A stretch of 64,000 nucleotides of DNA, taken from Botryllus schlosseri. Lineage: Eukaryota. Position numbers and translations under genes: made by a program. Below the pieces are notes generated by a model. That model had not been told where the DNA came from. It searched no databases and saw only the letters and a list, made by a program, of their open reading frames with translations. How positions within the stretch are numbered: position 1 is the stretch's first letter; each line of letters opens with the position of its first letter. The stretch lies in NCBI GenBank assembly GCA_051294905.1, contig CM119384.1, positions 7,440,001 to 7,504,000 on the forward strand. The letters are read 5' to 3'. Below are positions 9,201 to 46,903 of the stretch, piece by piece.

Positions 9201-12200
9201 GCACACCGCCGTACTGCAGTTTCTCCTCCAACGCCGCCTTCTTCAGTCCAAGTTGATTTCTCTCTGCGCGGAGCTGCTCGACGGCAGTCTCCAACCGACG
9301 CTGCCTGCCCGAAGCCGTCCGATCGGAACTGTCGTGAAGCTGCTGCTCTCTGGCGTGCAGCTTTTGATCGACCGTCGCCAGTTTCGACGCCACTTGAAGG
9401 ACTTCCGAAGTCATCACCTGCAAAGGTTCTGTTTGTAAAGGGTTTCCGGCACGAAACGAAATACCACACAGATAATTCTAGTTGTCTGATTAGTGCGAAA
9501 TGACAGTAATATAATTCTAATATAATTTGTGAAATGTTTATACGCTTTATTTTAAATTCTAATTTAATTTCTGGTTTTCCTTAAACTACTACAGCAGGAC
9601 TGTATATTGCGAAACTAGTCAAGCCTGGTGTAGAGACAGTTGCCATTCTCATGCTTAGGAAAATGAATAATTGATATTAGTTCAACGTGATTTTTGTTGC
9701 ATTTCTTTCTGATTAGGAAAAATTGTATAACTATACTTGTAATTTGACGATTTGGTCTTCACTTCTCCGGAGACTGCTGCAGTATTCGTGAATTTTACTC
9801 GGGGTTGAGAAGGAACACCATAAAGAAGTAGAAGGAACACCATAAAGTGAACTCGAATTACATGTAGAAGTAGCGATTTTTAGGACATGTCCCTAATAGT
9901 ATGAGCAGAAGTAGAAAAATGATGGTCTGAAAAGTACTCAAGTAATTTCAAAAACTACCGTAGATTCGGTCGCACGCATTGGATCGACGGCGGGTTATTT
10001 CCGAAATTGCAAGACTGATCTCAGCTCACCTGACTGGAGCGCAATTTTTTCGTTTCTAACGCTTCTTTCTGCCGCAGTACTTCCTCTCTCCTGATGACGG
10101 CGCTCTCTCTCGCGCGCAACGCGTCCTCCAGCTGTTTCAGAAGGTTCTGCTGCTCGACCGCCCTCTCAATCTCCTCGTCCAACCACTGCTTCTGGTCGTC
10201 CACGCCGTCCGGGCTGGTTCTCGTTCCCGATTTGGCTGTTCAATGATATTGAAAAAGTATTATGTGCGTCTATTGCCAACGGTCAACCAATCAGTGAACA
10301 GGTCAAGTTCAAAATCAGGGTGGTATTATTAGAGCTGGCCAAAATCGACTGCCCGTATCTGAGTAGATTGACTCCGATTTCATCTTAAGCCCAGTCAGGT
10401 TTTATGCGACCACGAAACAAAAAATGCAAGTTGCACTACTAACACATGCCCCTGACTACTCCGAGTTTCTACTTTCTTGTTTATATCATTTCCAGGTTTA
10501 TTGATGTGACGGGCAAAAACCTAGTTATCATGTCATTATATTGCAATCGTGTGGCGTTTTTGAATCGAATAAAACATCAATATACGACAGACTGACACTT
10601 GATCACCAATTATTTCCTATTATATTGACGCTACTATACCATTACATTGCTATGTCACTGCTACAATGTTAAGTTATTTGTGTGAATGTGGGTGGCCTGT
10701 GTTAAATGTCTTGGATGATATGATACGTCGTACAGAGGACACAGTTATCAGATATTTTACAATGATATTGCCAATCATTAGATAACAATGGGCAAATGAT
10801 TTCAGTACTTGAAAAAATCAATGATTTTCATACAAGTGATGATTCCGATATTCAAATCGTTATTACCAACCCAATTGTTTTTCAATTCATTGCTAAAGCG
10901 TAATCCAATAACAATGTCGCATTAGTTGAGAGAACAAAAATGCATTCTAATTCTGTTAAAGTAAAACTACAAAATATATTTCGACATAGTACCAGCCATA
11001 ATGTTCTGAAAATTATGATTCTACACGTTAAATTTGTTTACGCATCATTGCTAACGTGTATAGAATTTGATTCAGAGTATTTCTTCCAAATAATTCGATT
11101 TAAAATGCCCGTGGGTAATGGTACGGCGAAAATCTTGACATTTTGAAGTAGCAGTCGAACTTCACTTTCAAATGAATTTTACATACAGCTTCGCGACCAG
11201 AACTGAACAAAGTGATGTTACAGGACAGGTTACAGTTGTCATCAAAATAGATCGATGGTTTCCCATAACCGCACACCATCAATAACGCCACCAGACCACG
11301 AAGTGTCACCCTCATCCCTTCCCCCATTGTGACATCGACAGCCACGAGCGATTATTGTGATTGATCGCTCAAACACCGGATCAAATTTTGTCCGCAAAAT
11401 CCTGTATTTGTGGACATGCCATGAAATCTTAAGAGGCATAACCCGTGCCTATCCTTGCGTTTCCATTGTATCAATGTCTTTCAAACATGCCCCACCGCAC
11501 GCGATAATTTGCTACTAAAGTAGGCTATGACACGCTACGCGAAGCGTGAATCGAACTGGTTTCATATTTCGTGTCTGTGTAAATTGACAATAGACGAAGA
11601 AAGTTACAATGTTTGTGTGTATGAGCCACATAGAAAAGCAGCAGATTACATTTCTAATCCAGAAACGCAGACATTATTTAAAAAGGTCTGCTAGCTCGAC
11701 TCATTTGAAATTGTGTCTATGATGTATCATGCTGCATACTGAAATGGCAGCGTTATACAGCAGTGGTCAGTAAGGAGTAATAATTTTTAAAAACTTGAAA
11801 CATTTTGCATAGTAGATCTGTGTGTTGAAGCTGAGGCTGTGTCACAGTCACAGATGGGCAACAGTTGCCTTTGTGCAAATAATCAAGATACCAGTAATAA
11901 TCTGGCAGGACTACGGTACTTTGATGACTCGAGATGAATACCAAATACACTCCGTGTTGAAATGTCAGATTTCCTGGATTGAATTTGGCTTAAATCTGAC
12001 CGGAAAAAGACAAACCCTTCCTTTTGTCCGAATCTGAATTCGCCCTTCTCATTGTTTTGACTGCGGTCAATCGACAATAGTTTATAAAGACCCTTGACAT
12101 GGTAGAATGGATTTGAACATGTGCTAATAAAACCAATTACGTTAATAAGTCATTGAAGTGCCACGATAACATCTGCGCTCGATAAATTAGCCCGAGTCAA

Positions 12201-15200
12201 GTGCTTGTCACTTATGATAATGTGCAGGTTAATTCAAAGAATTTTCATAGTTCAACAACAGTTACCGGCTAGCATATCATAGATACCAGTCTCGAAATCA
12301 AATTAGAATGAATGGATTGAAGTCGGCTGTTATAGGTTTTCATTCAGTTCGAGCTAAGTAGCAGGCTGCGTGCTGACTGTGGATATCGTAAGACAAAAGC
12401 AGTGATGGTCACGGAGCCTAGAAATGGCAAGCTAGAAATCTGGTTTGATATTCCTAACGCAATTACAGAATAGGTTACAAGGAATGCATTTAATAAGTGC
12501 AGCAATAAAGCCTTACAAAGCCTACATCAGTAAACTCTATGGCATCAGAGATGATACAAAGTAGCCATTGTTGGCACTAAGTTGAAGTAGAAAGACAAAG
12601 CCTAAACTTATACTCAATAACATGTAGACATTTTGAGGCAGGGTTGTAATGACTCGAGTCCAACTTGAGTGGCGAATTTTTGGGTTGACTCGACTTGAGT
12701 CAAGTCATATTTTCGAATGCGCAAAATGACTAGACCAGAGTCAATTTTTGTATCAACTCTTCTTGTACTCGAGTCATTCGAACCAAGTCATACGACTCGA
12801 GACTAGGACGGCCAAGGCAGACATTTCATTGTAACTTCGAAGAATAGTAAAGTTATAACACTATTGGTATTTCGTCGGTCCTGATACTCGGAAAATACTG
12901 CCAGAAACTGTTAAAACTGAGGAAAATTACTATATTATGAATGCGAGCCATTCTATGTTACTAGCAGAGTTGAAAAAAGTGGGTTGAACCGGATTGAACG
13001 TAATGACTTGGACTCGGACTCGAGTCAAAACACTGCGACTCGGACCTCGACTAGCTGACTTGGACTTGACTCAGCGGTGAATTGAAAATGACTCGACTTA
13101 ACTCGAGTCAAAACTATAAAAGTGAAATTGACTTGATTGATTACAACCCTGTTTTGAACTAAGTAAAAAGTAGGTATTCTTGGCATAATTTTGTCCAAAA
13201 AACTACATATTGCGAAGTAGAAGTGAATGTAGTCAAAAATCATAAGTACTTGAGTACAGTACGTAATGCAAGTAGGCGTTCTGTTTCGAAAAAGGAGAAA
13301 TACCTAATTATTATCACTTCAGATCACTATCGTGCATGTACCAATTAATAGCGAATACAAAATCACAATATACACGTCATTATTGACAAGGGCATGAAAA
13401 CAGTGTCCTCTGCACAGCCAGTTGAATTCAACGCAAACCCGTTATTTTCAGCAGCATGAAGTTATCTCTAGTCAAACTCACGAATCTCGTGATATTAGGA
13501 TGCGCGATCGCCGACGCCGTCACCACCAGGTTCCTAAGATTCGACGAGAGCCACCAATTTCTTGAATGCAACTGCCCGTTCAAAATCTTCGGCTGTCGCC
13601 AGGTCGAAAACCTCACCCTGGACTGCGACGACTGCGCCTCCCGCACTTTTGACAACATCACCCTGCCGTTCTTAGAACGCACCACGATATGCTGCCGAGA
13701 CAACGAGGATTCATCGGATAAGACACTTTTAAACGTCCAAACCCTCGTGAATTATTTGAACAATTCCGACATACAGCATTTCGCCACGAACGGCTGCGAT
13801 TTCGAACAATCCGCCAACACCACATCGAACACAAGAGATTTTATAGCGATCAACGACTTTTGGAAGATTCGAATCAAAGAGATCGGCAGCGGGACCGTAC
13901 TGGCGCAAGCTAACGTCACAGAAAGCAAGCTGAACGTCTGGGCGAAGGCGCATACGTCTGAGAAAAGAGCCAGAGACTTGACCAACTCGCTCTACGTTAA
14001 GACAGACACGTTTAGCGAGGTGTACAGCGACAACAGCACGGTAAAATCCTTCACTGTCATAGATTGGAGCGGAAACAATTCAGACCCGAGCCTGCGGACA
14101 TACTTGTACGCGACAAGCGATACGGGAGACACTGACCCATGAACACATCCAGATACCAAAATTCATGTGATGTCGCGACAAATTTGCAAAGTACCAAGAT
14201 TCGCAAACGACACATGTCTGCAAGAAGTGACAATAAAGGGATTATTATCCAGTGGCAGGATAGAAATATTTTGCCGGCCGGTTCTATCGCAATAGTCATA
14301 AAATTCTTCAGACGGTTCTGTAAAAAAACTCATTGCCAAGCGGTTTGATGATCACGGAAAATCTTGTGACACGGTTTTATGAAAACGGTGTGAACCGACT
14401 GAATCCGACCGAGACATATTGAGGAAACATGGATTCAATGTATCACTACTGGAATCTGGCAAGAAACCAGGCTTTCGCACAGAATTCGAACTGACAATAA
14501 CATCAGAATTTCTACCGACCATCCCCCGACTCAAGACCTCATTTTACCATCTTTAAAACAATTATCAATGAGACAAAGGCTTTTCACAGTGACTTCCGCC
14601 GGCAAATTCTGCTAAAGCAAAAAATTATCGAAAAGACAGATTTCGCATCGGGAGAGGCTTTTCATTCTTTCGTGTGCCGGCTTTGACCAAAATTCGGCAA
14701 CCTAGTTTGTGACCAAAATTCGGCAACCTAGTTTGTGTCAACAAAAGGAGTACATTGAATTTAAGCCATATGTCCATCTCAATTATTGGAATTTTCATGG
14801 CTGTGACGTCAAATTCGGTGATTTGTTGATGTACAATGGTCTTTTAATTCTCTACTAGTTGCTGACAATCACCCCTTGACGAGTGTCAGCCGGAAATATT
14901 CAGGTTTATTTTCATATGAATATACCATTCATTCAATTGTCCGTTGAAGTTCTGCAGCTCCGAGAGTCTGTTCAAAGTAACCAAACGCGAGACTGGCCGA
15001 CAATCAACTACATACCGCTTCTCAGCTTCCGTTGAATGACGGCCACTTCCTCCGTCTTCCGCTTCAGTATCTTCTGCTGGTTTCTGTTCTTCAGTTCCAG
15101 TTCCTAAAAAGCGTCGGCGCAAAAGGTCACTGTGAATTCCGAACGGAAGGCTCCGCGGACGCGTACTTTAATTTTAGTCTGATCCCGTGTTAGCACCGTT

Positions 15201-18200
15201 TCTAATTTCCGTTTTTGGTCTTGCTCCTGCTTCAATTTCCTCTGCATGTCTTCTTGCATCTGACGCATCGTGGCAATTCCTGTCGTTAATGAATCGCGAT
15301 TAGTGTTACTTCAGTGATCCATGCGACATGGCGAACATTTTAAATGCCAACGACAGTATTATAACAATGGACGAAGGATATCAGTTGCGACTTGCGATAT
15401 CTCGTAATAAAGACTGACCAATATCTCAAATGAGAGTCTGCAGAAAAACGGACAAAGTAATATCGAAATACAGTAATTAACAAGCCGGCATAGCATAGTC
15501 AGGACCGCTTGGGAAGAATAGCAAAATAACTCCGGGAATACAGTCGCTTTGCCGCGTCTGATGGCATTTGATCGCACAAAATATCCTGACTAATTTGGCG
15601 TCGTCGGGAGAAGCCGTTTGATAAAGGTGGTCGGCAATAAAGTTCTTCTGCTCAGGGTTGTAATGACGCGCGTCTGACTCGAGTCGGGATTTTTTTGTGA
15701 CGAGACTTGACTCGAGTCAATTTTTGTATTGACTCGACTTGTACTCGAGTTATTCTGCCTGACTCGAGCCAAGTCACATGACTCGAGACTAGGACTGCCA
15801 AGACAGACATTTCATTGTAATTTCGAAGAACAGTAAAGCTAACACATTATTGGTTTTTCGTCTATCAGACGTGATACTTGAAAATAGGGCCAGAAACTGT
15901 TGAAACTGAGGAAAATTACTATATTAGCCTACCAATGCGAGCTATTCTATATCCCTCGAGCAGAGTTGAAAAATGGGGGTGAACTGAAAACTGAACAGTG
16001 AGCATAATGACATGGACTTGACTCGGTGGTGAGTTGAAAATGACTCGACTTGCCTCGAGTCAAAACTATAAAAGTGAGATAGACTTGCGACTCGGAACCT
16101 TGTGACTTGATTGACTTGATTACAGCCCTGCTTCTACTGTCCTGAGGGCAATCAAGCCTACATGCAGTATAAAATCTATTTAACTTTTACACTTTGGATT
16201 ACATAAAGCAGAAATTAGCTTTGCGATATGTTTGCACTACTTCTATGAGTGAAATTGTCGTAATAACCGGGCGAAATTGCCCATGAATCACAGAAACTGA
16301 ATATATTTTCGGTGTCGTTAGTCATGCCGGCCGGGTTAGCATTCTGCGCTTTGCGAAGTCTCCGATTAACTGCTAACAATCTGCGGCCCATCGTCCAAAT
16401 CTACTTTATGAAATGACTGGAGTACTTTTGATATCTTCATCCGTACTTCATGTTGAAGTAGTTTGTAGACATTGCTACTTCTACTTGTAATTGAGTATAA
16501 ATTTATAGCGTCACTCCTACTTCTAGTTCTACTTCAGCAACAAGCTGTGCAAAAGTCATAGCAGCACATCATTCATTGACTTAGACAGGCGGTTTTACAT
16601 CAGGCCCACAGTGACCCAACATCACTCACCTAACTCCAATTCTTTAATTTTCTTTCTGTTCTGTGCGGGAATCGTTGCGAGACTCTCAGTTTCTCTCTGC
16701 TTCTTCTGAAGCATCTGAACGGAAACAATACAATTCGCCATGCATCCTTGAAAATATCGTCTTTACGACACGAGACTACGAACATGGTAGCAAACTAGCA
16801 TATTTGTTTCAGATCAACAATAATCGGCTGGTAATAATTGACTTGTTCAGATCGAGGGGCTTGCTTTGTGGCACTGGGACACAGCAAAGAGATCTGGTTG
16901 AAATACCAGGGTTTGGCCTATAGTTTACGTATCTTGAAGATGCTTGCTTGAACAAATTTCTGAAAATCAATACACTTTATCTTTATAAAAAAGATGTTAA
17001 CGGAATGGAGAGAAGAACCAAGCATTCCGTATTGTAAGTACAGAGTAGGTGTCCGCATGACCACCTGTGATTAAAATGTGGGTCCTTGGTGATACCTTGA
17101 TGCGCTATGGAATTCAAATGGTCGAAAAAATGTAAGGAAACCAATCACTCCAACCGGATGCAACCATCAATTTCACGAGTGATCAGCAAGCCAAAAACAA
17201 GCCAAAAACAAAAAATGCAGAATACAACAAACCTGAACTTTTGATTTCGCCGCCTTCAGCCTCTGCTCATACTCCACTTTCAATTTCTGCATCTCCTAAA
17301 TCATAAAGAGCGTTGTTTTGAATCAAAATCTGCATCACTACAATTTTATCGGTGCGTCAGCTAGTATGGAGGTACGGACGCGTCATTCAAGACTATTATT
17401 AATCAGCGTACTACAAGGCAATCGTTACCTACACATTTTATAATGCTGAACGCTAAGCACAAAAACTCTAGTCTGGAAGAATGTTGGGATGACTCGGGTC
17501 ACGTTTTTCGAAAGATTTGAACCCGGCGTAATTGGCAAAATAGGAAATCACTCGTGACTCGGATTTTAATTTGAGTCAACGTTGAAGTCATTAAATATTT
17601 CCTTCCCACAGCATTTTAAGCCACTCAGGCAGGTTGAAACGTGATCTCGGCCTCAATACTAATCTGGACTCAAATTCTACTCGCATGGAGCATACCCTTT
17701 TTCTGAGCGGCATTCTCAAATCTCAGCGACGTACTCAAAAATTTCATCCCGTGCACATTAATCAAACTGAAAATATTTGGTGGCCTGGCATTGGAATATT
17801 GGAGACGACTTGAATTGTGACTCCAGTTGAAAATTTTTCAAATCATTTGACTTCATTCCAGTGAAAAATTACGATGACCCGAAACGCCTTCCGACTAGAA
17901 AGTACGGTATTGACTTGATCCCAAGACTGGTCCAGAATAAGTTATGAGTAGGGCGGATTTTTATGACCTAAAAAAGAAAATTTTGACCTAAAAAATCCAA
18001 ATTTTGACTTTTTTGACCTAAACAAACTGAATTTTGACCAAATTTTGACCTAGCGTATGCAAATTAGGTGTTTTCCCACGTAATGTTAAAATTGCACCAC
18101 TTATCTACATTTCTGGTTGGAATAGGCTGTCCTAACGAAGAAGTTTGGCCTGAAAAAACGTTTTTTGCTTAAAAACAGGCAACATTTTACATGAAAAACA

Positions 18201-30200: not shown

Positions 30201-33200
30201 GTATCTTTTTCTAAAGCTGTCATCAATTCTTATAGAGCTTTCAGGAATAATTAACAATATTTTATAACAGGACCAGTAACGTAACTAATAATAGCGTGTA
30301 TTTCACTTTTTACAGGCAGTAAATCTTCAACAAAGTCGCCTCGACGTTCCAGGTGGTCTAGAAGCGGCAGTAAGAAATCGTCAAGCATCAAGAGATCCTT
30401 TTTATCGTTCCAACCATTCCACCACGCAAAAGAGCCGGTCCATCTCAGCCCGGTGAAAGGATCCAAGACAGATTCCCTCAAGGAAAACGCGGTACGGTCG
30501 GCATCGACCGCAGACAATCAACCCGGTAAATCGTCGAAAAAGCACGCCGGCAAGACCCTCGCATCTAACGACCAAAACAAAACCACGACCAAACATTCTT
30601 CCAGAAAAGCGAAGGCGTTGTCTCAAAAATCAGCACAACAGAAATCATCGAACACCGCTATAAAGCAAGATAAACATTTACCAAACGGCGATGTGCGGTT
30701 ATCGACAAAACCAGCGGTAGAAGTGTATCATAGAGGAGATGCAAACGATCTGGTGTTGGTAGTAAATTTAACCGAAGAGCAGAAAGAATTAACCGAAACC
30801 TCGACAACATCAAGCAAGCCGCGCGAGGTTGCGGACACGAAAAAAGAAACCAAGAAACCGGAAAAACCTCACACGAGATTCGCCTCCAGTATCGAAGTCA
30901 GAAAAACAAACGAGGCCAACACGATTCCCACGTTGATGCCTTCAATTCTCGACAAGACGACGAGAAAAGTTTCAAAATCCCCAAAGTCAACATCTCGAAG
31001 GACCAACTATAAGCTACAGCGTTCGTACAGCGACCCCACAGGGACGCCGCACGAGTCTCAAGTGCTGACCCAGCAAAAGCAGCGAGTCAGTCACGCTAAA
31101 GTCACCAAGACGCACTCCTTCAAAAAGACAGGGAGGCCACGCCATCACAGCATGGATACGCAGGATCCCGAAAAGACAGGTCCAGACGCTTGGAAGCAAG
31201 AGATGAAACATCCGGACGAGGACACCAATTTCAAATTTCAAAACAATGTCAAATTTAGAAACTCCTGCATCGGGGAGTGTTACCCTTTGTTAAAAACAAG
31301 GATTCCGGAGGAGCATGTCAAAGAAGATGGCAGCATCACGCTCAGGGGGTTCGAAAAGAGCGACGTAAATCGGGACTCTGGGGTGGAAGTGGATAACATC
31401 ACTTCCAAAACTGTATTATTCAACAACAGTACCGACGAATCAGAGGCAGATTCGAGAGACAGTGTTTTCGAATCCAGCAACGATGACGAGACGAATTTCG
31501 GCACTTTGAAGCTTAGTAAAGACAAGGAAAAAACAGCCGACGACAACCCTAGTGAAATCGACGACAGTACGTTGACAAGAAGTTCGCGAAAATCTAGAGA
31601 TATCGAAGGTATGCGCCTTGTTTTATAACAAATATATAAACTGTGGCGTTGACAAGCTTTTTTGACCCCAAAATTTGTTTGGATCGTTGCATGAACTTGC
31701 TATTGCGACTTAGCCCAAGATAATTTAAATAATATATATTTCGGATTCACCTAACCGCGGACTTTGGGAGGCTGATGACTAAATAAAAAGGTCATTTCTC
31801 ATGGTCTCATAGCCATAATGGTCTATTTGATGCTTTAAAAGCTAAAAAAAACAGGTCAACACTTTAATACAGTCCTCACCATGTGATTATTACTACTTTA
31901 ATTGTTTTTGTGGCTATTTTGACCTGTGGTGAGCACTGACAATAAGAATGGACGTAAGGACAATGTAGTTTTACAGTTTATCGTAGCAGTTTCAAGATTG
32001 CCATATCGCGGACCCCTTAAAACCACTCCGTAGAGCCCCAAGGCGTCCATGGACAGCAGTTTAAGAACCTGTGTCAGAGCAACAAGCTCCCGATGATAAA
32101 ACGGATTGTAGAATCTTTTTTATATGTTCGAGCTCGCACAGGCCTTCACGTTGCACTATTTCCCATGTGAAAATATATGCTGACATGAAACTGACTAATC
32201 TCATGTTAATCGCCTAATATGTGCAAATACAAGACTGCGTCTTTGCGCTGTGTCAAGGTATCATGTGCCTTGACCTGACGAATTTTTAGATCAATGAGTT
32301 TGATATGAAGATTGTAACAAAATGCAATGAGGTTTCCGTGTAATCAGGAGTATTGGCGGAACGAAACTGCAATTTTGTGAATAGGCAAACACCCTTAGTA
32401 AACGCCTTCCTGTTATTGTATCGTGGGATTCGGTTTCAGTCTAGACTAAACATTCTACATGACCGGACATATCAGCACTATAACCCGTTTGGTTAATTCC
32501 TGTCTTTTCATTGTCTTTTATGCTGAGCTGAATTTATTAATCCTAGCCAATTGCAACCAATTTTATAAATAACATCTGTATTTGTGAATGCAGGGTGCAA
32601 TCAGACCAGTTGACCCTACGTAGAGTTATATCACACCCTGCCCTACACCGTTAAGTTCGTTTGTTATAATTTCATCAGCCAACTTATTTTATTTTCGGTT
32701 GGACAAATCAGTAAATATTTGTCCCTCTCTTTTATATATTACTACGCATATGCCTTGGACCACCCTGCGATATGTCCGCATGGGATACCTAACTGTCAAT
32801 ATCAGATCTACACATACAAAGCCAAAGCGTCATCGCGCACCGCCACCAATGTCAGACAAAAAGAAATAATCGAAAAAAGCCATGATTTTCCTGATCAATC
32901 ACTTTTAAACACGATATTCCAAAACTTCGCATGTAAAACAACCGTCAATAATCGCAGTTGTATCACAGTGTTAGTTTCGTAAATCGATTTGCATTGCATA
33001 CGTGTATACTGCAAAGGCCATATTAATCCTTAATAAAAGGTTAATTGAATGATAATACCATCGTGCTGAGATAAGCGTTTAGAAAATAGAAACATAACCT
33101 TTTTCGTGTGAAACTAGAGATAATATAAAATACGATAGCGTTGCGGCCAAACCATGTATATGTCAGCGGAAAGTCTATTGGACACATCTCTTCTTACAGA

Positions 33201-42200: not shown

Positions 42201-45200
42201 ATTGAATAAAAATTGAAGAGCTTCTTGGAGGTACAAAACTTGAATAGGCTATATAATTGAATAGTAGCGTATATTCATATCAAGATAAACCCGACTATTT
42301 CTCACTGGGCAGCAAGCCTTTTCTCCGTAGGCCGCAGGCTGAACACCTCTGAGTTACAAGACAGTCGATAAGTAAAACTAAAGCAATCAAGACCAGGTAA
42401 ACATAAGAAAACTACTCTATCATAGAAAAAATATACATCAACCCACAGACCTGCTGCGGATCCCGATTAACGACCGGCTTGTTTGTGATGTTCTTTGCGC
42501 GATTCGCATATTTCAACGCGTTTATGGTCTCAGCGAAGCTCGTCGACGACGGACTGATGCAGGTTATCATCACAGTGTGCGCGTTACCTCCGAGGGAATC
42601 TTTCAAAACTCTAAAAACAGCAAAAGCGATTACTGGCGTTCTAGCGTTTTCATACCGATTAACTAAATAGTATATTCATATTGAAATGAACCCGAATATT
42701 TTCGGCTGACACTCGTCAGGGGTAATCGTCAGCAACTAGTAGAGAATTGGAAAGAACATTGTATATCAACAATCGTATCACAAAATATGACGTCACCAGC
42801 ATGAAAGAGAGAGCGTTCTTTCATGCTGGTGACGTCATATTTTGTGATACGATTGTTGATATACAATGTTCTTTCCAATTCTCTACTAGTTGCTGACGAT
42901 TACCCCTGACGAGTGTCAGCCGAAAATATTCGGGTTCATTTCAATATGAATATACTATTTAATTGTATATTGAAGTTCTGTACCTCCAAGAAGCTCTTCA
43001 AATACCGATTAACGTAAAAAGTTGGTAGTTTAACCAAAAAAATTGGTAGGTAGAAGTGAAAGCAGTCAACTAGGCAAAAACCTGCCTCAATACGTTAAAA
43101 AAAATGTGAAGTACCTCGTTACTGGCCACCGCTGTATATTCTACACAAGAACGGGTACCGTAATATGTCACCTGGTGATCTTGGAATCTCGATACGGAAC
43201 GTGCCCCATTTTCTTCTTCTTTGGATCGCTCAGGGCGCTGATGACATTCCCCAACGCCAGGAGCCCGGTGTTGATTTGCACGGATTCCTTGAACCTGTCC
43301 CAAACCGATACCCTGATATTAATCTTTGCCGAATCGGGTCATCGTTCGAACTGGGAAAAATCGAGAATCTATGTGATTCCATTACGAATTGTGTATTAGG
43401 CATCTAGTTGAATCGAGGAACATTTATTATGACTTGATAACAGTATCGATGACGTGGAAAATCTAAATATGTACCTTTATTTGCAGCCACTAAGACAATA
43501 ATGGAAGTTCTACATCACATTAAAATTATTCGGTATTTTTTCGACGATACCTATTTCATCACACTTTGTGACAATGCTGATCATGACTTCAGAGAAATGT
43601 CATTTCCACTAAAGCGCTTAGTTTTGTACTAGATGTTTTGGAGGCTGCGATACGACCAACTGAAGTTTTAAGCTTCCCGCGTTGGGAACAAACAATCAAA
43701 CAATAATTCTTGTTCAGAACAGAACTCTTAACGGAAAGGAGGTATAATTTCAGTATTAGAAAATAATCGTCTTTCACTACTCAACTCGATTCATAACAAT
43801 TAACACTCGATTGGAATTTGAGCACTCGAATCATTGTTCCCAGCCCTCGTCATCTCCAGTTGTGATTGCCGCGGACGCAAGCTCAGGCAAAAGCCACAAT
43901 ATAATTTCCAGGGGCAATGTAAGGACATGACGGGTGTATTATGAATCTAAATGACAGACTGAAGTCAACTTATATGATTTTGCTACGGTGGTGCATATTG
44001 ACAATATTTCAAATATAGATTGCGATAATATTTATGATTTACACCAAATACAGTGTAAATAATAAATTACAAATTACGGTTCTAGTATCAACTACCTTTC
44101 GCCCGTATTCCCAGTTCTGTTCGCTCTTTCCGACCCCGCCAGATCAACGAAATGAAATTTAGAAGACATGACGTTAACCAACTTCTCTTCGTTGAGATCG
44201 GTGCTTGCGATGCTGCTCAGAATATCCACCGAAGAAGAATTGTTGTTGTTATTGTCGTTTTGGGGTCTGGGCGTACACGGCCATGTCTGGAAGACACAAC
44301 AAATGACCCACATGAAGACACTTCCCTGATGCAATGAGGTGCCGACGCTCCTTGAGCAAGCACGATAAGAATGACAAAGTGTGAAATCAAACACGTCTTA
44401 TTTCCGATATACTACCATCTGTGAGACATGCTATTAAAGAAAACTCTGTTCTGTCTTGCAAATCATGGAAATTCCGCATGATCGGGGTTCGATCAAGGAT
44501 GCAACAATCATTAATACAACTAGATCGCTGGTTGAGTCCATATAAAATGAAATTATCAAAACCTCCTCCGGGCAAGCTACAAGTATACAAACCAGGGTCG
44601 TAACCAAGTCACAAGGTTCCGAGTCACAAGTCAATCTCACTTTTATACTTTTGACTCAAGTCGAGTCATTTTCATTTCACCACCTAGTCAAGTCCGAGTC
44701 AACTAGTAGAGGTTCAAGTCCGAGTCACAGTGTTTTGACTCGAGTCCAAGTTGTTGTTTTCACTGTTCAGTTTTCAGTTCAATGCTGCTCTGCTCGAGTG
44801 ATATAAAATAACTTTAGTATTCTTGGAAATAACAATGAAATGTCTGTCTTGGCCGTGTCAGTCTCGGGTCATGCAAAATGACTCAGGTACAAGTCGAGTC
44901 AATACACAATAGGACTCGAGTCGAGTCGAGTCACCACAAAATCACGACTGGAGTCAGACTCGAGCCATTACAACCCCGATACAAACCATGTTATATTTGT
45001 TACAATGCTGAGTTTGGTATCGAGGATGCATATTGCATAACTCACGCATGCTGTTGTATTCTTACTGCCAAGGGTCAAATGTACCACTTGATACAGCAAG
45101 GTCGAACGGTACCTGGATCAGATGAAGGCTGAAGATTGCGTGCGATCGGCTGGACAGTTCGTTCATCTGCGTTGCGCCGGTGTGCCGGACCGCACTGCCT

Positions 45201-46903
45201 TTTTGTAATAGACTCATCACTTCCTCGGCGGTGATGCATACTTCTTCTCGAGCCCCGATTATCACTAAAACAATTTTCCTATTGTAAGGTATAACTGGAA
45301 AAAATCCAACCACGGAAAAATATAGCAATAGCATTGTCACAGCATTTGTAGAGCGATTATTTACAAGAAAAGTACATGGTGTGGCACTTGCTAACAAAAC
45401 ACCATGCAACTTTCAATAAGCATTTGAAGAAGAATTTAACGACTACGAGTAATTTCACATACTGGTATTCCAATTTTGAGAGTTACCTTAGGGTACCATA
45501 CAATAAGACTCCAAATTATTGGCATGGCAAGTTTGGTTACGTATCAAAGCCAAAGTAAGTATTTCTCCATTTTAAAAGCTACTTTTTGATCTTACCAAAT
45601 ATCGTAACATTGTATTTCCAGGCTACGGCTGTAGTGAGAGAATTCGTATCTAACAATGAAAGCGCTACAGCGGCAATGTAGACCACAATAACAATCACAG
45701 ATACGGAGTGGACATTTGGAGAAAAATTGCTAATTATATTGATCAATGATCAATGCAACCAACAACGCATAAGTTTTGATTATTATCATCAGTGTCTTAC
45801 CAGTGTTACCATTCTGGTCTTCACGTATGTGCACGTCTTGACATTTTTGCAAGTCCACCTCCAGCAAATCTCTCACTTCCTCTTTATAAATCTCGACGTA
45901 AGACACCTGATAGAATGAAAAGCTTATCAAAGTGTTTAACTACCGAGATGATTAAAGACAAACCTTTAAGCTGTGATCGATATGCTTTCTGCCAAGCTGT
46001 TTCATTTCGCTGAAAATATTATCAACTGCTCTCGGTATGATGCCGCGTTCCTCTTTCGTAATATTAGCAGGATTGCTACCGCCGATAGTATATGTTTTTC
46101 CAGAGCCTGTCTGGCCGTAAGCAAATACGGTGGCATTATATCCTTGGAAGTATGTTGCGATGAGAGGCTTGATTGTGGTCTTGTATATTTCCTGAAATTG
46201 AAAATGCATAGTAGTTTCTATCCGAGAATGTGGGAAAGTATCTTTTGTTGTACTACAATAAATTTCAATTATTTGTACCATATTATGTGATGTAACTTAC
46301 TGGAATTCTTCATGGGTCCAGATTTTGTTAAAATACAGTTTTTTCATGTAAACATTTGGCAGCTTTTTCAAGTCAAAAAAGTTTTTTTTGGGCCAAACTA
46401 ATTCGTAAAGACAGACAGTTCCAACCAGAAATGAAGATAAGTAGTACAATTCTAACATTATGTGAGAAAACAACTCATTTACATACGTGAAGTAAAAATA
46501 TTGCCAAAATTAAGTTTTTCAAGGTCAAAAAATGTCAAAAGTTTGATTTTTTTGGTCAAAATCTTTCTTTTTCAAGTAAAAAAAAATTGCCCTAATTATT
46601 ACTATACAATATGGAGAGATATGTATACCTGTTGCTTGGCACTCCACCAGTGCAGATGGTCAAATGTGAAGGACCGATCTTTGCCAACTATGAGCTGATT
46701 CTTTGATTTCGGAACTTTTTTAACGCAAACCTAAATCACGGAAATGCATTTAGTTTGAATTTACCAAAAGAACGCATGTGAAACGGTTGTGCCAAATATA
46801 TAGTACGCCTAGCACACCATACCTGATGACTGTGAAGTCTTTCACCAGGTAAGAGAGGACGCACTCTTACAGCAACGCAAACATTCACAGGAGTTTCAGC
46901 CAT
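3259..46903 (-). CDS. KIF27: Kinesin-4 family motor, KIF27/KIF7 (Costal2-like), 28 coding exons, about 1461 aa
   Basis: Manually spliced GT-AG exons in 5'->3' order, all phase-compatible, total 4386 nt: 46903-46823, 46730-46629, 46191-45964, 45906-45801, 45264-45113, 44286-44096, 43294-43172, 42610-42451, 42072-41977, 41505-41346, 40656-40571, 40506-40387, 38546-38331, 21517-21309, 20568-20492, 19999-19835, 19131-18992, 17295-17233, 16714-16630, 15279-15167, 15103-15016, 10235-10030, 9417-9190, 8568-8353, 7456-7344, 7066-6981, 5541-5320, 3812-3259. Kinesin motifs: [14 protein letters not shown]-loop, [26 protein letters not shown]7/27-like tail motifs: [44 protein letters not shown]7 versus KIF27 cannot be resolved by eye. 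Confidence 0.92.
3965..5301. mobile_element. Related GACTCGAGTC-rich element with CAGTGTTG ends, containing a Tc1-like MITE
   Basis: CAGTGTTG...CAACACTG termini and GAGTC arrays at both ends. No clear TSD. Confidence 0.55.
4313..4701. mobile_element. Tc1/mariner-type fold-back MITE
   Basis: TIR CAGTAGGGTTGT...ACAACCCTACTG flanked by a TA duplication. Confidence 0.75.
5646..6212. mobile_element. Second copy of the Tc1-like fold-back MITE (about 250-bp imperfect arms, right end lost)
   Basis: Starts CAGTAGGGCTGTTCAAAAA. 5706-5945 pairs with 5965-6210. Homologous to 4313-4701. Confidence 0.7.
6293..6705. mobile_element. Older GACTCGAGTC-rich hAT MITE
   Basis: CAGGGTTGTAAT...CTACAACTCTG, with a degenerate TSD (5/8 match). 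Confidence 0.65.
7892..8172 (-). mobile_element. tRNA-derived SINE with Meta-like central domain, full length
   Basis: Reverse complement has an A-box-like TAGGGTAATTGT, B box GGTTCGATTCC and GGATCAGACCAAAGACC...CTTCCCCGTCTGGCGTTCAGCATTA. Confidence 0.75.
12639..13151. mobile_element. GACTCGAGTC-rich hAT MITE
   Basis: TIR CAGGGTTGTAAT...ATTACAACCCTG and TSD TTTTGAGG/TTTTGAAC. Confidence 0.8.
13456..14142 (+). CDS. Single-exon secreted Cys-rich glycoprotein, EPCIP/C21orf62-like, nested antisense in KIF27 intron 21
   Basis: 228-aa ORF with a hydrophobic N-terminal signal-like segment, a CxC-x6-C-x9-C-x2-C motif and 7 N-glycosylation sequons. [13 protein letters not shown] and [22 protein letters not shown] resemble the recalled human EPCIP segments EYLAICGLKRLRI and YISFLDMALFNRDSALKSYSI. 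A TTATTTTCAG acceptor lies 4 nt before the ATG. The family call is from memory. Confidence 0.7.
   Translation: MKLSLVKLTNLVILGCAIADAVTTRFLRFDESHQFLECNCPFKIFGCRQVENLTLDCDDCASRTFDNITLPFLERTTICCRDNEDSSDKTLLNVQTLVNYLNNSDIQHFATNGCDFEQSANTTSNTRDFIAINDFWKIRIKEIGSGTVLAQANVTESKLNVWAKAHTSEKRARDLTNSLYVKTDTFSEVYSDNSTVKSFTVIDWSGNNSDPSLRTYLYATSDTGDTDP
14791..14975 (+). mobile_element. Diverged full-length monomer (about 185 bp) of the hammerhead repeat family
   Basis: Aligns along 42817-43001. Core is degenerate (UUGACGA...GGAA). Confidence 0.7.
15653..16130. mobile_element. GACTCGAGTC-rich hAT MITE
   Basis: CAGGGTTGTAAT...ATTACAGCCCTG and TSD CTTCTGCT/CTTCTACT. Confidence 0.82.
17949..18820 (-). mobile_element. 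Internally deleted hAT element with a transposase C-terminal relic
   Basis: TAGGGCG...CGCCCTA termini and TTTTGAC subterminal arrays. The minus strand encodes [12 protein letters not shown], then after a frameshift [15 protein letters not shown], resembling the hAT dimerisation motif PxSSxxxERxFS. Confidence 0.6.
26866..36087 (+). CDS. Leucine-rich-repeat protein with long Ser/Lys/Thr-rich low-complexity N-terminus, about 752 aa, nested antisense in KIF27 intron 13
   Basis: Phase-compatible GT-AG exons 26866-26950 (tentative first exon), 30316-31608, 33167-33364, 33604-33749, 34488-34624, 34770-34937, 35856-36087, total 2259 nt. LRR units include [60 protein letters not shown] and [11 protein letters not shown]. 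Confidence 0.78.
35085..35215 (-). mobile_element. 3' fragment of the same SINE, in the last intron of the LRR gene
   Basis: Shares GAGTGCATGATGTGCATA and CTGTGCATATG with the other copies. Confidence 0.6.
37327..37410. repeat. Short fold-back fragment of the hammerhead repeat family 3' end
   Basis: AAGAGCATTTTAGAGGTACCGAACTTCAATATAC followed by an inverted ATATGAATATACTAT segment. Confidence 0.5.
37555..38034. mobile_element. GACTCGAGTC-rich hAT MITE, opposite orientation
   Basis: CAGGGTTGTAA...TTACCCCCTG and TSD CTACATGT/TTACATGT. Confidence 0.82.
38623..39249. mobile_element. AGTAG/TACTT-rich hAT-like MITE, hosting a hammerhead-family insert
   Basis: CAGAGGTGGTC...GACCAGCTCCT and an 8-bp direct repeat AGCATAAC on both sides. 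Related fragments at about 520-700, 8180-8280, 9780-9960, 16390-16540, 20150-20406 and 63860-63990. Confidence 0.6.
38747..38866 (-). mobile_element. Hammerhead-family copy with degenerate core, nested in a hAT MITE
   Basis: Reverse complement reads CCCTGACGAGTGTCAGCCGCAAATATTC...GAAGCTCTT, with helix I 3' strand deleted. Confidence 0.7.
42213..42280 (-). repeat. 3' fragment of the hammerhead repeat family
   Basis: TTGAAGAGCTTCTTGGAGGTAC matches the reverse complement of the family 3' end. Confidence 0.6.
42690..42723 (-). ncRNA. Minimal hammerhead ribozyme motif, mirror copy, sense in the KIF27 pre-mRNA
   Basis: Exact reverse complement of 42902-42935 within the palindrome. Confidence 0.7.
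42902..42935 (+). ncRNA. Minimal type I hammerhead ribozyme motif
   Basis: ACCC-CUGACGA-G(UGUCAGC)C-GAA-AAUAUU-C-GGGU. Helix I is ACCC/GGGU, the core is CUGANGA...GAAA, helix III is the palindrome AAUAUU, and the predicted cleavage is after C42931. Confidence 0.72.
44593..44978. mobile_element. GACTCGAGTC-rich hAT MITE
   Basis: CAGGGTCGTAA...TTACAACCCCG and perfect TSD ATACAAAC. Confidence 0.85.

What the first reader, a model, noticed from the sequence alone, without database searches (positions are those of the whole stretch)
13441..14142. Probable invertebrate EPCIP (C21orf62/CU062) homologue nested antisense in a ciliary kinesin gene
Seen: an intact 228-aa single-exon ORF with a signal-like N-terminus, a Cys cluster and 7 sequons. 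Recalled: human EPCIP is about 219 aa with a single coding exon, a CxC-x6-C-x8-CxC motif and the segments YLAICGLKRLRI and FNRDSALKSYSI, which fall in the same order as [12 protein letters not shown] and [12 protein letters not shown] here. EPCIP is a polycystin-1-binding exosomal protein known mainly from vertebrates, and KIF7/27 act in cilia. Inference: this would extend the family to an invertebrate chordate. Any functional link from the nesting is speculative.
Basis: partly seen in the sequence, partly recalled or inferred. Interest (0 to 1): 0.7.

Follow-up and report, generated by a model that had tools for sequence, protein, structure and literature searches.

The report
Sea-squirt relative of vertebrate EPCIP
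A small, expressed, single-exon gene for a secreted sugar-coated protein sits backwards inside an intron of a cilia-type kinesin gene, and predicted-structure searches repeatedly pick the vertebrate polycystin-1 partner EPCIP as its closest relative, a family that the literature calls vertebrate-only.

Summary
A 228-aa ORF lies at 13456-14142 (+). It has one N-terminal hydrophobic segment, nine Cys (eight invariant in the family) and seven N-glycosylation sequons.

It is a real gene:
- Single copy in the genome.
- Three 221-246-aa relatives in other assemblies, at 54, 32 and 27% identity.
- A discrete 1.4-kb RNA contig (13450-14876), plus raw RNA-seq reads.

A spliced RNA contig joining 10235 to 15016 shows that it lies antisense in a 4,780-nt intron of a KIF7-like kinesin.

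EPCIP homology could only be tested through structure:
- The two AlphaFold models are poor (pLDDT 42-43). One is the window protein, the other a 32%-identical relative without its signal peptide.
- Searched in two libraries each, they put EPCIP/C21orf62 (Pfam PF15137) first in all four searches.
- Best Foldseek E-value is 3.5e-5 with probability 1.00; the next hits are at E 0.03-0.1.
- A PDB search, where I saw no EPCIP entry, gave nothing.

Sequence methods do not support membership:
- The Pfam model does not score any of the four family members.
- Protein-language-model searches give no match.
- TM-scores stay at 0.34-0.45.

I read it as a divergent EPCIP homologue (about 0.7), in what earlier scan notes call a sea-squirt genome. 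PMC10487028 states the family is absent outside vertebrates. Any function with polycystin is inference only.

The parts
13441..13455 (+). Pyrimidine tract plus AG (acceptor-like) and 4-nt leader just before the ATG. This is a possible cis- or trans-splice acceptor.
   Evidence: Sequence ...gttattttcag/cagc ATG. The longest RNA contig of run X2 starts exactly at 13450. No joint at this site was listed, and a contig of run X1 reads through it from 13236, so splicing here is inferred, not shown.
13456..14142 (+). Complete coding sequence, 228 aa plus stop, in a single exon: the EPCIP-like secreted glycoprotein.
   Evidence: ORF listing. Single copy in the genome. Relatives P0001, P0002 and P0003. 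RNA contigs and raw RNA reads. EPCIP ranks first in four structure searches.
13456..13515 (+). Probable signal peptide (residues 1-20).
   Evidence: It is the only hydrophobic segment of the protein (Kyte-Doolittle maximum 2.0 at residues 5-19). All four family members start with one. SignalP was not run.
13567..13797 (+). Cysteine-bearing core: C38-x-C40-x6-C47-x9-C57-xx-C60, then C79-C80 and C114. Includes the conserved sequon N102.
   Evidence: All eight Cys are invariant in the four-sequence alignment A1, and the sequon at N102 is present in all four.
14143..14876 (+). 3' untranslated region. AATAAA at 14232, and a perfect 26-nt tandem duplication at 14684-14735.
   Evidence: The X2 contig runs 13450-14876 without a difference. 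X1 contigs stop at 14184. 3'-tag single-cell reads at 14601-14800 lie in the sense expected of a + strand mRNA. Poly(A) signal; duplication.
10236..15015 (-). Host intron of the kinesin gene (4,780 nt) that holds the whole nested gene.
   Evidence: A 2,716-nt RNA contig of X2 joins 10235 to 15016. The skipped ends are CT..AC, which is GT..AG on the - strand.
10026..10235 (-). Kinesin coiled-coil exon downstream (in the kinesin's sense) of the host intron.
   Evidence: RNA contig pieces in X1 and X2. Open - strand frame with heptad-like sequence.
15016..15281 (-). Kinesin exon(s) upstream of the host intron, with an optional 63-nt intron at 15103-15165.
   Evidence: X1 and X2 contigs join 15102 to 15166 (CT..AC). 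Open - strand frame.
44095..46296 (-). Kinesin motor-domain exons of the host gene (P-loop, SSRSH and DLAGSE motifs).
   Evidence: Motif scan. Pfam Kinesin hit at 26.5 bits, below the family's 29.3-bit cut-off. The best solved-structure match of two exons is KIF7.

Best explanation
This is an expressed, single-coding-exon gene for a small secreted protein. The protein is probably N-glycosylated and disulfide-bonded, and it is a strongly diverged homologue of vertebrate EPCIP (C21orf62/CU062, Pfam PF15137). It lies antisense inside a 4.8-kb intron of a KIF7/27-type kinesin gene, but it is transcribed as its own unit. Shown here: the ORF, its conservation in three other species' assemblies, its RNA, the nesting, and EPCIP as the best structural match. 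Inferred from sequence: the protein enters the ER through an N-terminal signal peptide, forms up to four disulfides from eight invariant Cys, carries N-glycans (N102 conserved in all members, N153 in three) and is released as a soluble protein. Inferred only by analogy with human EPCIP: it binds the ectodomain (PKD repeats) of a polycystin-1-like receptor on vesicles or cilia, and self-associates.
For: Gene reality: the ORF is intact, with raised GC and a single genomic copy. Relatives of 246, 243 and 221 aa score E 2.3e-74, 9.9e-18 and 5.4e-7, with 23 invariant columns including eight Cys. One relative is also a single-exon ORF on a genomic contig.

RNA: the X2 contig covers 13450-14876 at depth 20, while most of the surrounding intron has depth 0. 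Raw RNA-seq reads in X23 cover the ORF at depth 2-6, while the kinesin exon at 10.0-10.2 kb has none.

Homology: Foldseek against AFDB Swiss-Prot ranks mouse and human EPCIP first and second, at E 3.5e-5 and 4.3e-5, probability 1.00, query 2-218 against hit 9-219, with the next hit at E 0.11. A model of the mature part of P0002 again ranks them first and second, at E 2.5e-3 and 4.3e-3, matched to mature EPCIP (human residues 30-219). The ESM Atlas shape search puts the cluster 'C21orf62 homolog' (PF15137 in 100% of members) first for both models, at TM 0.44 and 0.45. As a control, the PDB search, where I saw no EPCIP entry, gave no hit better than E 0.28.

Shared gross features with human EPCIP as described in PMC10487028: about 219 aa, a signal peptide and no transmembrane segment, several N-glycan sites, and the whole ORF in one exon.
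Against: The Pfam ECPIP model (PF15137, cut-off 27 bits) reports no match at E <= 10 for this protein or its three relatives. A six-frame search of the whole genome with that model did not even pick this locus as a candidate. Language-model feature searches gave no usable hit, or chance-level NIDO hits. Both AlphaFold models are poor (mean pLDDT 43.2 and 41.7). TM-scores are 0.34-0.45 with large rmsd, and sequence identity in the structural alignments is 8-15%. No profile-profile comparison could be run, because no EPCIP sequence could be obtained from a tool. PMC10487028 says the family was not seen in Tunicata or Cephalochordata. No binding or localisation data exist.
Confidence: 0.7

Rival explanations
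1. A lineage-restricted secreted Cys-rich glycoprotein that is not descended from the EPCIP ancestor. On this reading, the rank-1 EPCIP matches reflect a similar size, a similar beta/alpha order and a generic CxC-x6-C cap-like motif shared by convergence, made to look stronger by two low-confidence models.
For: No sequence-based method links the two families. TM-scores are below 0.5 and pLDDT is about 42.
Against: The same family came first in four of four searches over two libraries of 0.55 million entries and 7.7 million clusters, using two proteins only 32% identical. The first match stands about 3,000-fold, and the second about 10-fold, above the next hit in E-value. The match is end to end and persists without the signal peptide. 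The PDB control was empty.
Confidence: 0.24
2. Not a protein-coding gene: a chance or decaying ORF inside an intronic or antisense non-coding transcript.
For: The exact protein is not in a 15-billion-protein collection. One RNA sample shows a 2-nt deletion at 14055 in 4 of 7 reads, and six of eight SNPs seen in the ORF change the residue.
Against: Full-length intact relatives exist at 27-54% identity, with invariant Cys and a conserved sequon. The transcript is discrete and GC is raised. The deletion rests on reads starting at only two places.
Confidence: 0.03

Closest known systems
EPCIP / CU062 / C21orf62 (Pfam PF15137 'ECPIP', formerly DUF4571), the exosomal polycystin-1-interacting protein of vertebrates
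   Same: Similar length (228 against 219 aa). Signal peptide without a transmembrane segment, and multiple N-glycan sequons. The whole ORF is in one exon. There is an N-terminal Cys cluster. EPCIP is the best, end-to-end match of two predicted structures in two libraries.
   Different: It does not reach, or even register with, the Pfam model. Identity is only 8-15% in the structural alignments. The motif spacing is CxC-x6-C-x9-CxxC, with an extra CC doublet. It is found in a genome that earlier scan notes take for a sea squirt's, whereas the family is described as vertebrate-only (PMC10487028). No binding to polycystin-1 has been shown.
LRR N-terminal cap (LRRNT) proteins such as small leucine-rich proteoglycans
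   Same: From my own knowledge, a CxC-x6-C cluster at the start of a secreted beta/alpha protein is the LRRNT signature. Fungal F-box/LRR-type clusters were the second rows of one Atlas search.
   Different: No Pfam LRR or LRRNT hit and no PDB match. The F-box rows match only part of much longer proteins. This is a lead on fold class, not a membership claim.
Intron-nested antisense genes of animals
   Same: A complete small gene with its own transcript lies inside one intron of a larger gene on the other strand.
   Different: Nothing indicates a regulatory or functional tie. Expression is uncoupled in one RNA sample. The nesting is not seen around relative P0002, whose neighbour is a PLP-dependent enzyme gene.

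Membership tests
EPCIP (Pfam PF15137 ECPIP / DUF4571) | Score above the Pfam gathering threshold (27 bits) for PF15137 | tested here: not met
   hmmscan at E <= 10 returns no family for the window protein, and no PF15137 hit for P0001-P0003. A genome-wide six-frame search with PF15137 finds only a 16-bit hit elsewhere, with stop codons in it.
EPCIP (Pfam PF15137 ECPIP / DUF4571) | Same fold as EPCIP over the whole domain | tested here: inconclusive
   EPCIP ranks first in four of four searches (E 3.5e-5 to 4.3e-3, probability 0.95-1.00). But TM is 0.34-0.45 and the models have pLDDT of about 42.
EPCIP (Pfam PF15137 ECPIP / DUF4571) | Small secreted protein: signal peptide, no transmembrane segment, about 220 aa, single domain | tested here: met
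   228 aa, and the only hydrophobic segment is at residues 3-20. Compared with the description in PMC10487028. SignalP was not available.
EPCIP (Pfam PF15137 ECPIP / DUF4571) | Several N-linked glycan sites, partly conserved | tested here: met
   Seven sequons. The one at N102 is present in all four members and the one at N153 in three. Actual glycosylation was not tested.
EPCIP (Pfam PF15137 ECPIP / DUF4571) | Whole ORF in a single coding exon | tested here: met
   Uninterrupted ORF. The RNA contig is collinear with the genome over 13450-14876. The same holds for P0002 on genomic contig L002. The human gene structure is from PMC10487028.
EPCIP (Pfam PF15137 ECPIP / DUF4571) | Significant profile-profile (HMM-HMM) match to the family alignment | not testable with these tools
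   No EPCIP sequence or seed alignment could be obtained from any tool, and typing one from memory was not acceptable.
EPCIP (Pfam PF15137 ECPIP / DUF4571) | Binds the polycystin-1 ectodomain and self-associates | not tested
   Needs experiments. Earlier scan notes report polycystin-1-like receptor genes in this genome.
Kinesin-4, KIF7/KIF27 type (host gene) | Kinesin motor domain closest to KIF7/KIF27 | tested here: met
   Motor motifs on - strand exons at 44-46 kb. Pfam Kinesin hit at 26.5 bits, below the 29.3-bit cut-off for this single exon. KIF7 is the top solved match for two exons. KIF7 and KIF27 were not told apart.

The most novel reading that the evidence does not exclude
EPCIP is not a vertebrate invention. 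On this reading, a true orthologue exists in tunicates and still works with polycystin-1-like receptors on cilia or extracellular vesicles. That would date the polycystin-EPCIP partnership to the common ancestor of tunicates and vertebrates, and would give a simple, genetically tractable chordate in which to test what EPCIP does.
Probability: 0.3. Interest if true: 0.6.

Novelty: new member of a known kind. Interest (0 to 1): 0.5.

Why it matters
EPCIP is a recently named, poorly understood partner of polycystin-1, the protein mutated in most dominant polycystic kidney disease. The paper that described it states that its domain exists only in vertebrates and was not seen in tunicates or cephalochordates (PMC10487028). 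A diverged homologue in a sea squirt would move the family's origin back to at least the tunicate-vertebrate ancestor. It would also show that the Pfam model is too narrow, and would provide a small family of far-diverged sequences that mark the truly constrained positions: eight Cys, one sequon and a few aromatic and charged residues. It would allow knock-out and localisation tests in a simple chordate. It is a modest advance for genome annotation and a useful lead for polycystin biology, not a new kind of system.

Tried and rejected
- Pfam scans of the ORF and its three relatives gave nothing relevant. The only hits were sub-threshold Glyco_transf_52 and Phlebovirus_G1, taken as chance.
- A whole-genome six-frame search with PF15137 found only a 16-bit CxC-x6-C match on another contig, interrupted by stops. 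I judged it chance.
- ESM Atlas feature searches gave no usable hit for the ORF and chance-level NIDO hits (0.80) for P0002.
- The word-indexed search with profile A1 found only the three known relatives. A further search with P0003 alone found only itself.
- Profile A1 against PDB sequences gave only two hits at E 0.2, ignored.
- P0004, a 3,386-aa protein with seven weak matches to residues 126-178, is a giant immunoglobulin-repeat protein. I take the match as repeat-amplified chance.
- Fetching EPCIP by UniProt accession is not possible, so no hhalign was run.
- The DNA of the closest relative, P0001, could not be fetched, so no dN/dS was computed.
- Searching papers for the SRA run numbers of the relatives found nothing, so their organisms remain unknown.
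It is not clearly enriched in this genome (30 matches against 11 for the control, at up to one mismatch). I therefore neither confirm the taxon myself nor claim trans-splicing of this gene.
- The two repeat copies flanking the ORF are not a composite element that carried the gene, because kinesin exons lie between them.
- No complex prediction was run, because I make no binding claim.

Full report
**The observation**

An ATG-to-TGA ORF of 228 codons lies at 13456-14142 on the + strand.

The translated protein has these features:
- one hydrophobic segment, at residues 3-20, and no other;
- nine cysteines, one of them in the leader;
- seven N-x-S/T sequons.

GC is 0.48-0.52 over the ORF against 0.35-0.41 beside it. 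It is the second longest ORF in the first 50 kb. The window has no N.

**Is it a gene?**

- It is single copy in the 495-Mb genome, so it is not a repeat-borne ORF.
- An exhaustive phmmer search of 1.8 billion cluster representatives found three full-length relatives: P0001 (246 aa, 55% identity, E 2e-74), P0002 (243 aa, E 1e-17) and P0003 (221 aa, E 5e-7). All three are known only from Logan assemblies of sequencing runs and carry no names.
- The four sequences align end to end with 23 invariant columns. Eight of these are Cys, in the pattern C-x-C-x6-C-x9(11)-C-x(1-2)-C ... CC ... GC.
- The sequon at N102 is present in all four, and that at N153 in three.
- P0002 sits on an 8-kb genomic contig as an uninterrupted ORF. 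Its downstream neighbour is an intron-bearing PLP-dependent enzyme gene.
- The exact window protein is absent from a 15-billion-protein collection, so it appears to be unannotated.

**Transcription and context**

- In run X2, a 2,716-nt contig joins 10235 to 15016, skipping 4,780 nt with GT..AG ends on the - strand. Another contig joins 15102 to 15166. The run therefore holds spliced RNA, and 10236-15015 is an intron of a - strand gene.
- In the same run, a 1,427-nt contig matches 13450-14876 without a single difference at depth 20, while most of the rest of the intron has depth 0. This is a discrete unit, not retained intron.
- Run X1 has contigs covering 13236-14184.
- Raw RNA-seq reads of run X23 cover the ORF at depth 2-6, while the kinesin exon at 10.0-10.2 kb has none. 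Expression is therefore not tied to the host gene.
- 3'-tag single-cell reads at 14601-14800 lie in the direction expected of a + strand mRNA ending near 14.9 kb.

The - strand gene has motor-domain exons at 44-46 kb with P-loop, SSRSH and DLAGSE motifs. The best solved match of two of these exons is KIF7. Coiled-coil exons continue down to about 3 kb. The nesting in a KIF7/27-type kinesin is therefore confirmed.

**The EPCIP question: sequence methods**

All sequence methods failed.
- Pfam reports nothing for the ORF at E <= 10, and no PF15137 hit for the relatives.
- PF15137 is the ECPIP model, with 218 positions and a 27-bit cut-off. A six-frame search of the whole genome with it returned only a 16-bit CxC-x6-C match on another contig, with stops in it.
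- A profile of the four sequences found no further proteins.
- Language-model features gave nothing useful.
- I could not obtain any EPCIP sequence from a tool, so no profile-profile comparison was possible.

**The EPCIP question: structure methods**

AlphaFold2 on the four-sequence alignment gave a poor model (pLDDT 43.2).
- Foldseek against 550,129 AlphaFold Swiss-Prot entries nevertheless ranked mouse and human EPCIP first and second. E-values were 3.5e-5 and 4.3e-5, probability 1.00, with residues 2-218 aligned to 9-219 of the human protein. The third hit had E 0.11.
- As a replicate, I folded the mature part of P0002, which is 32% identical to the window protein (pLDDT 41.7). Mouse and human EPCIP again came first and second (E 2.5e-3 and 4.3e-3), now aligned to mature EPCIP.
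- The ESM Atlas shape search put the cluster 'Uncharacterized protein C21orf62 homolog' first for both models. That cluster has PF15137 in 100% of its 178 members. TM was 0.44 and 0.45, with 160 and 133 residues aligned at 5.2 and 4.2 A.
- As a control, Foldseek against the PDB, where I saw no EPCIP entry, gave nothing better than E 0.28.

Four of four searches returning a family that had been named beforehand is very unlikely by chance. Still, TM stays below 0.5, and both sides of every comparison are predictions.

**What it most likely is and does**

The most likely reading (about 0.7) is a far-diverged homologue of EPCIP. By sequence, it enters the secretory pathway, forms up to four disulfides, is N-glycosylated and is released as a soluble protein.

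Human EPCIP is a secreted glycoprotein of 219 aa. It has a 26-aa signal peptide and five glycan sites, and its ORF lies in one exon. It self-associates, binds the polycystin-1 ectodomain (PKD repeats), and is found on urinary vesicles, migrasomes and vesicles attached to cilia (PMC10487028; PMC11781568).

That the window protein does the same with one of this genome's polycystin-1-like receptors (earlier scan notes) is inference only. The nesting in a ciliary kinesin gives no functional evidence. Expression is uncoupled in one sample, and the neighbourhood differs in a relative.

**Rivals**

- A lineage-restricted secreted protein with a convergent fold (about 0.24). It is favoured by the failure of all sequence methods and by the poor models.
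- A non-coding transcript with a chance ORF (about 0.03). It is disfavoured by conservation. Two points are worth noting, though. Six of eight SNPs seen in reads change the residue. A 2-nt deletion at 14055 appears in 4 of 7 reads of one run, from only two read starts.

**Novelty**

PMC10487028 states that DUF4571 occurs only in vertebrates, back to sharks, and is not seen in Tunicata or Cephalochordata. I found no paper linking C21orf62 with tunicates or Ciona.

Earlier notes of this scan take the genome for a sea squirt's. I did not verify the taxon.

If the homology holds, this is a new and very divergent member of a known family. It extends the family beyond vertebrates.

Noticed in passing
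window 12639-13135 and 15653-16087: Two direct copies (81-94% identical over five matched blocks of 43-99 nt) of a dispersed repeat about 450-500 nt long flank the nested gene. In RNA-derived contigs the repeat reaches summed depths of thousands, and it produces many false 'joints' between the two copies. Kinesin exons lie between them, so this is not a composite element carrying the gene.
   Followed up: partly
window 30453-31628 (+): A second single-copy ORF of 391 aa (open frame 447 aa) lies on the + strand inside the same kinesin gene. It is rich in Lys, Ser and Thr, looks disordered and has no Pfam family. It is possibly another nested gene or a large exon.
   Followed up: partly
window 14055: A 2-nt deletion inside the ORF (codon 200, before the conserved D203 and Y218) appears in 4 of 7 RNA reads of run X23, but from only two read starts. 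It could be a frameshifting allele or an artefact. Another polymorphism, T195M, would remove the N193 sequon.
   Followed up: no
window 15103-15165 (-): A 63-nt optional intron within the kinesin exon block 15016-15281. Contigs of two runs show the joint. Another contig (14847-15045) crosses the intron-exon border unspliced, and low-depth + sense 3'-tag reads reach 15.4 kb. A longer 3' UTR of the nested gene may therefore overlap the kinesin exon in antisense.
   Followed up: no
window 14684-14735: A perfect tandem duplication of a 26-nt unit in the 3' UTR of the nested gene.
   Followed up: no
L005:1501-1668 (G000 contig 13, 8515440-8515607): The only genome-wide candidate for the Pfam ECPIP model: 16 bits, a CxC-x6-C stretch in a frame broken by stop codons. 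Probably chance.
   Followed up: partly
L002:2245-3700: Next to relative P0002 lies an intron-bearing gene for a PLP-dependent enzyme of the threonine dehydratase/serine racemase type, on the same strand. The kinesin nesting is therefore not conserved there.
   Followed up: partly
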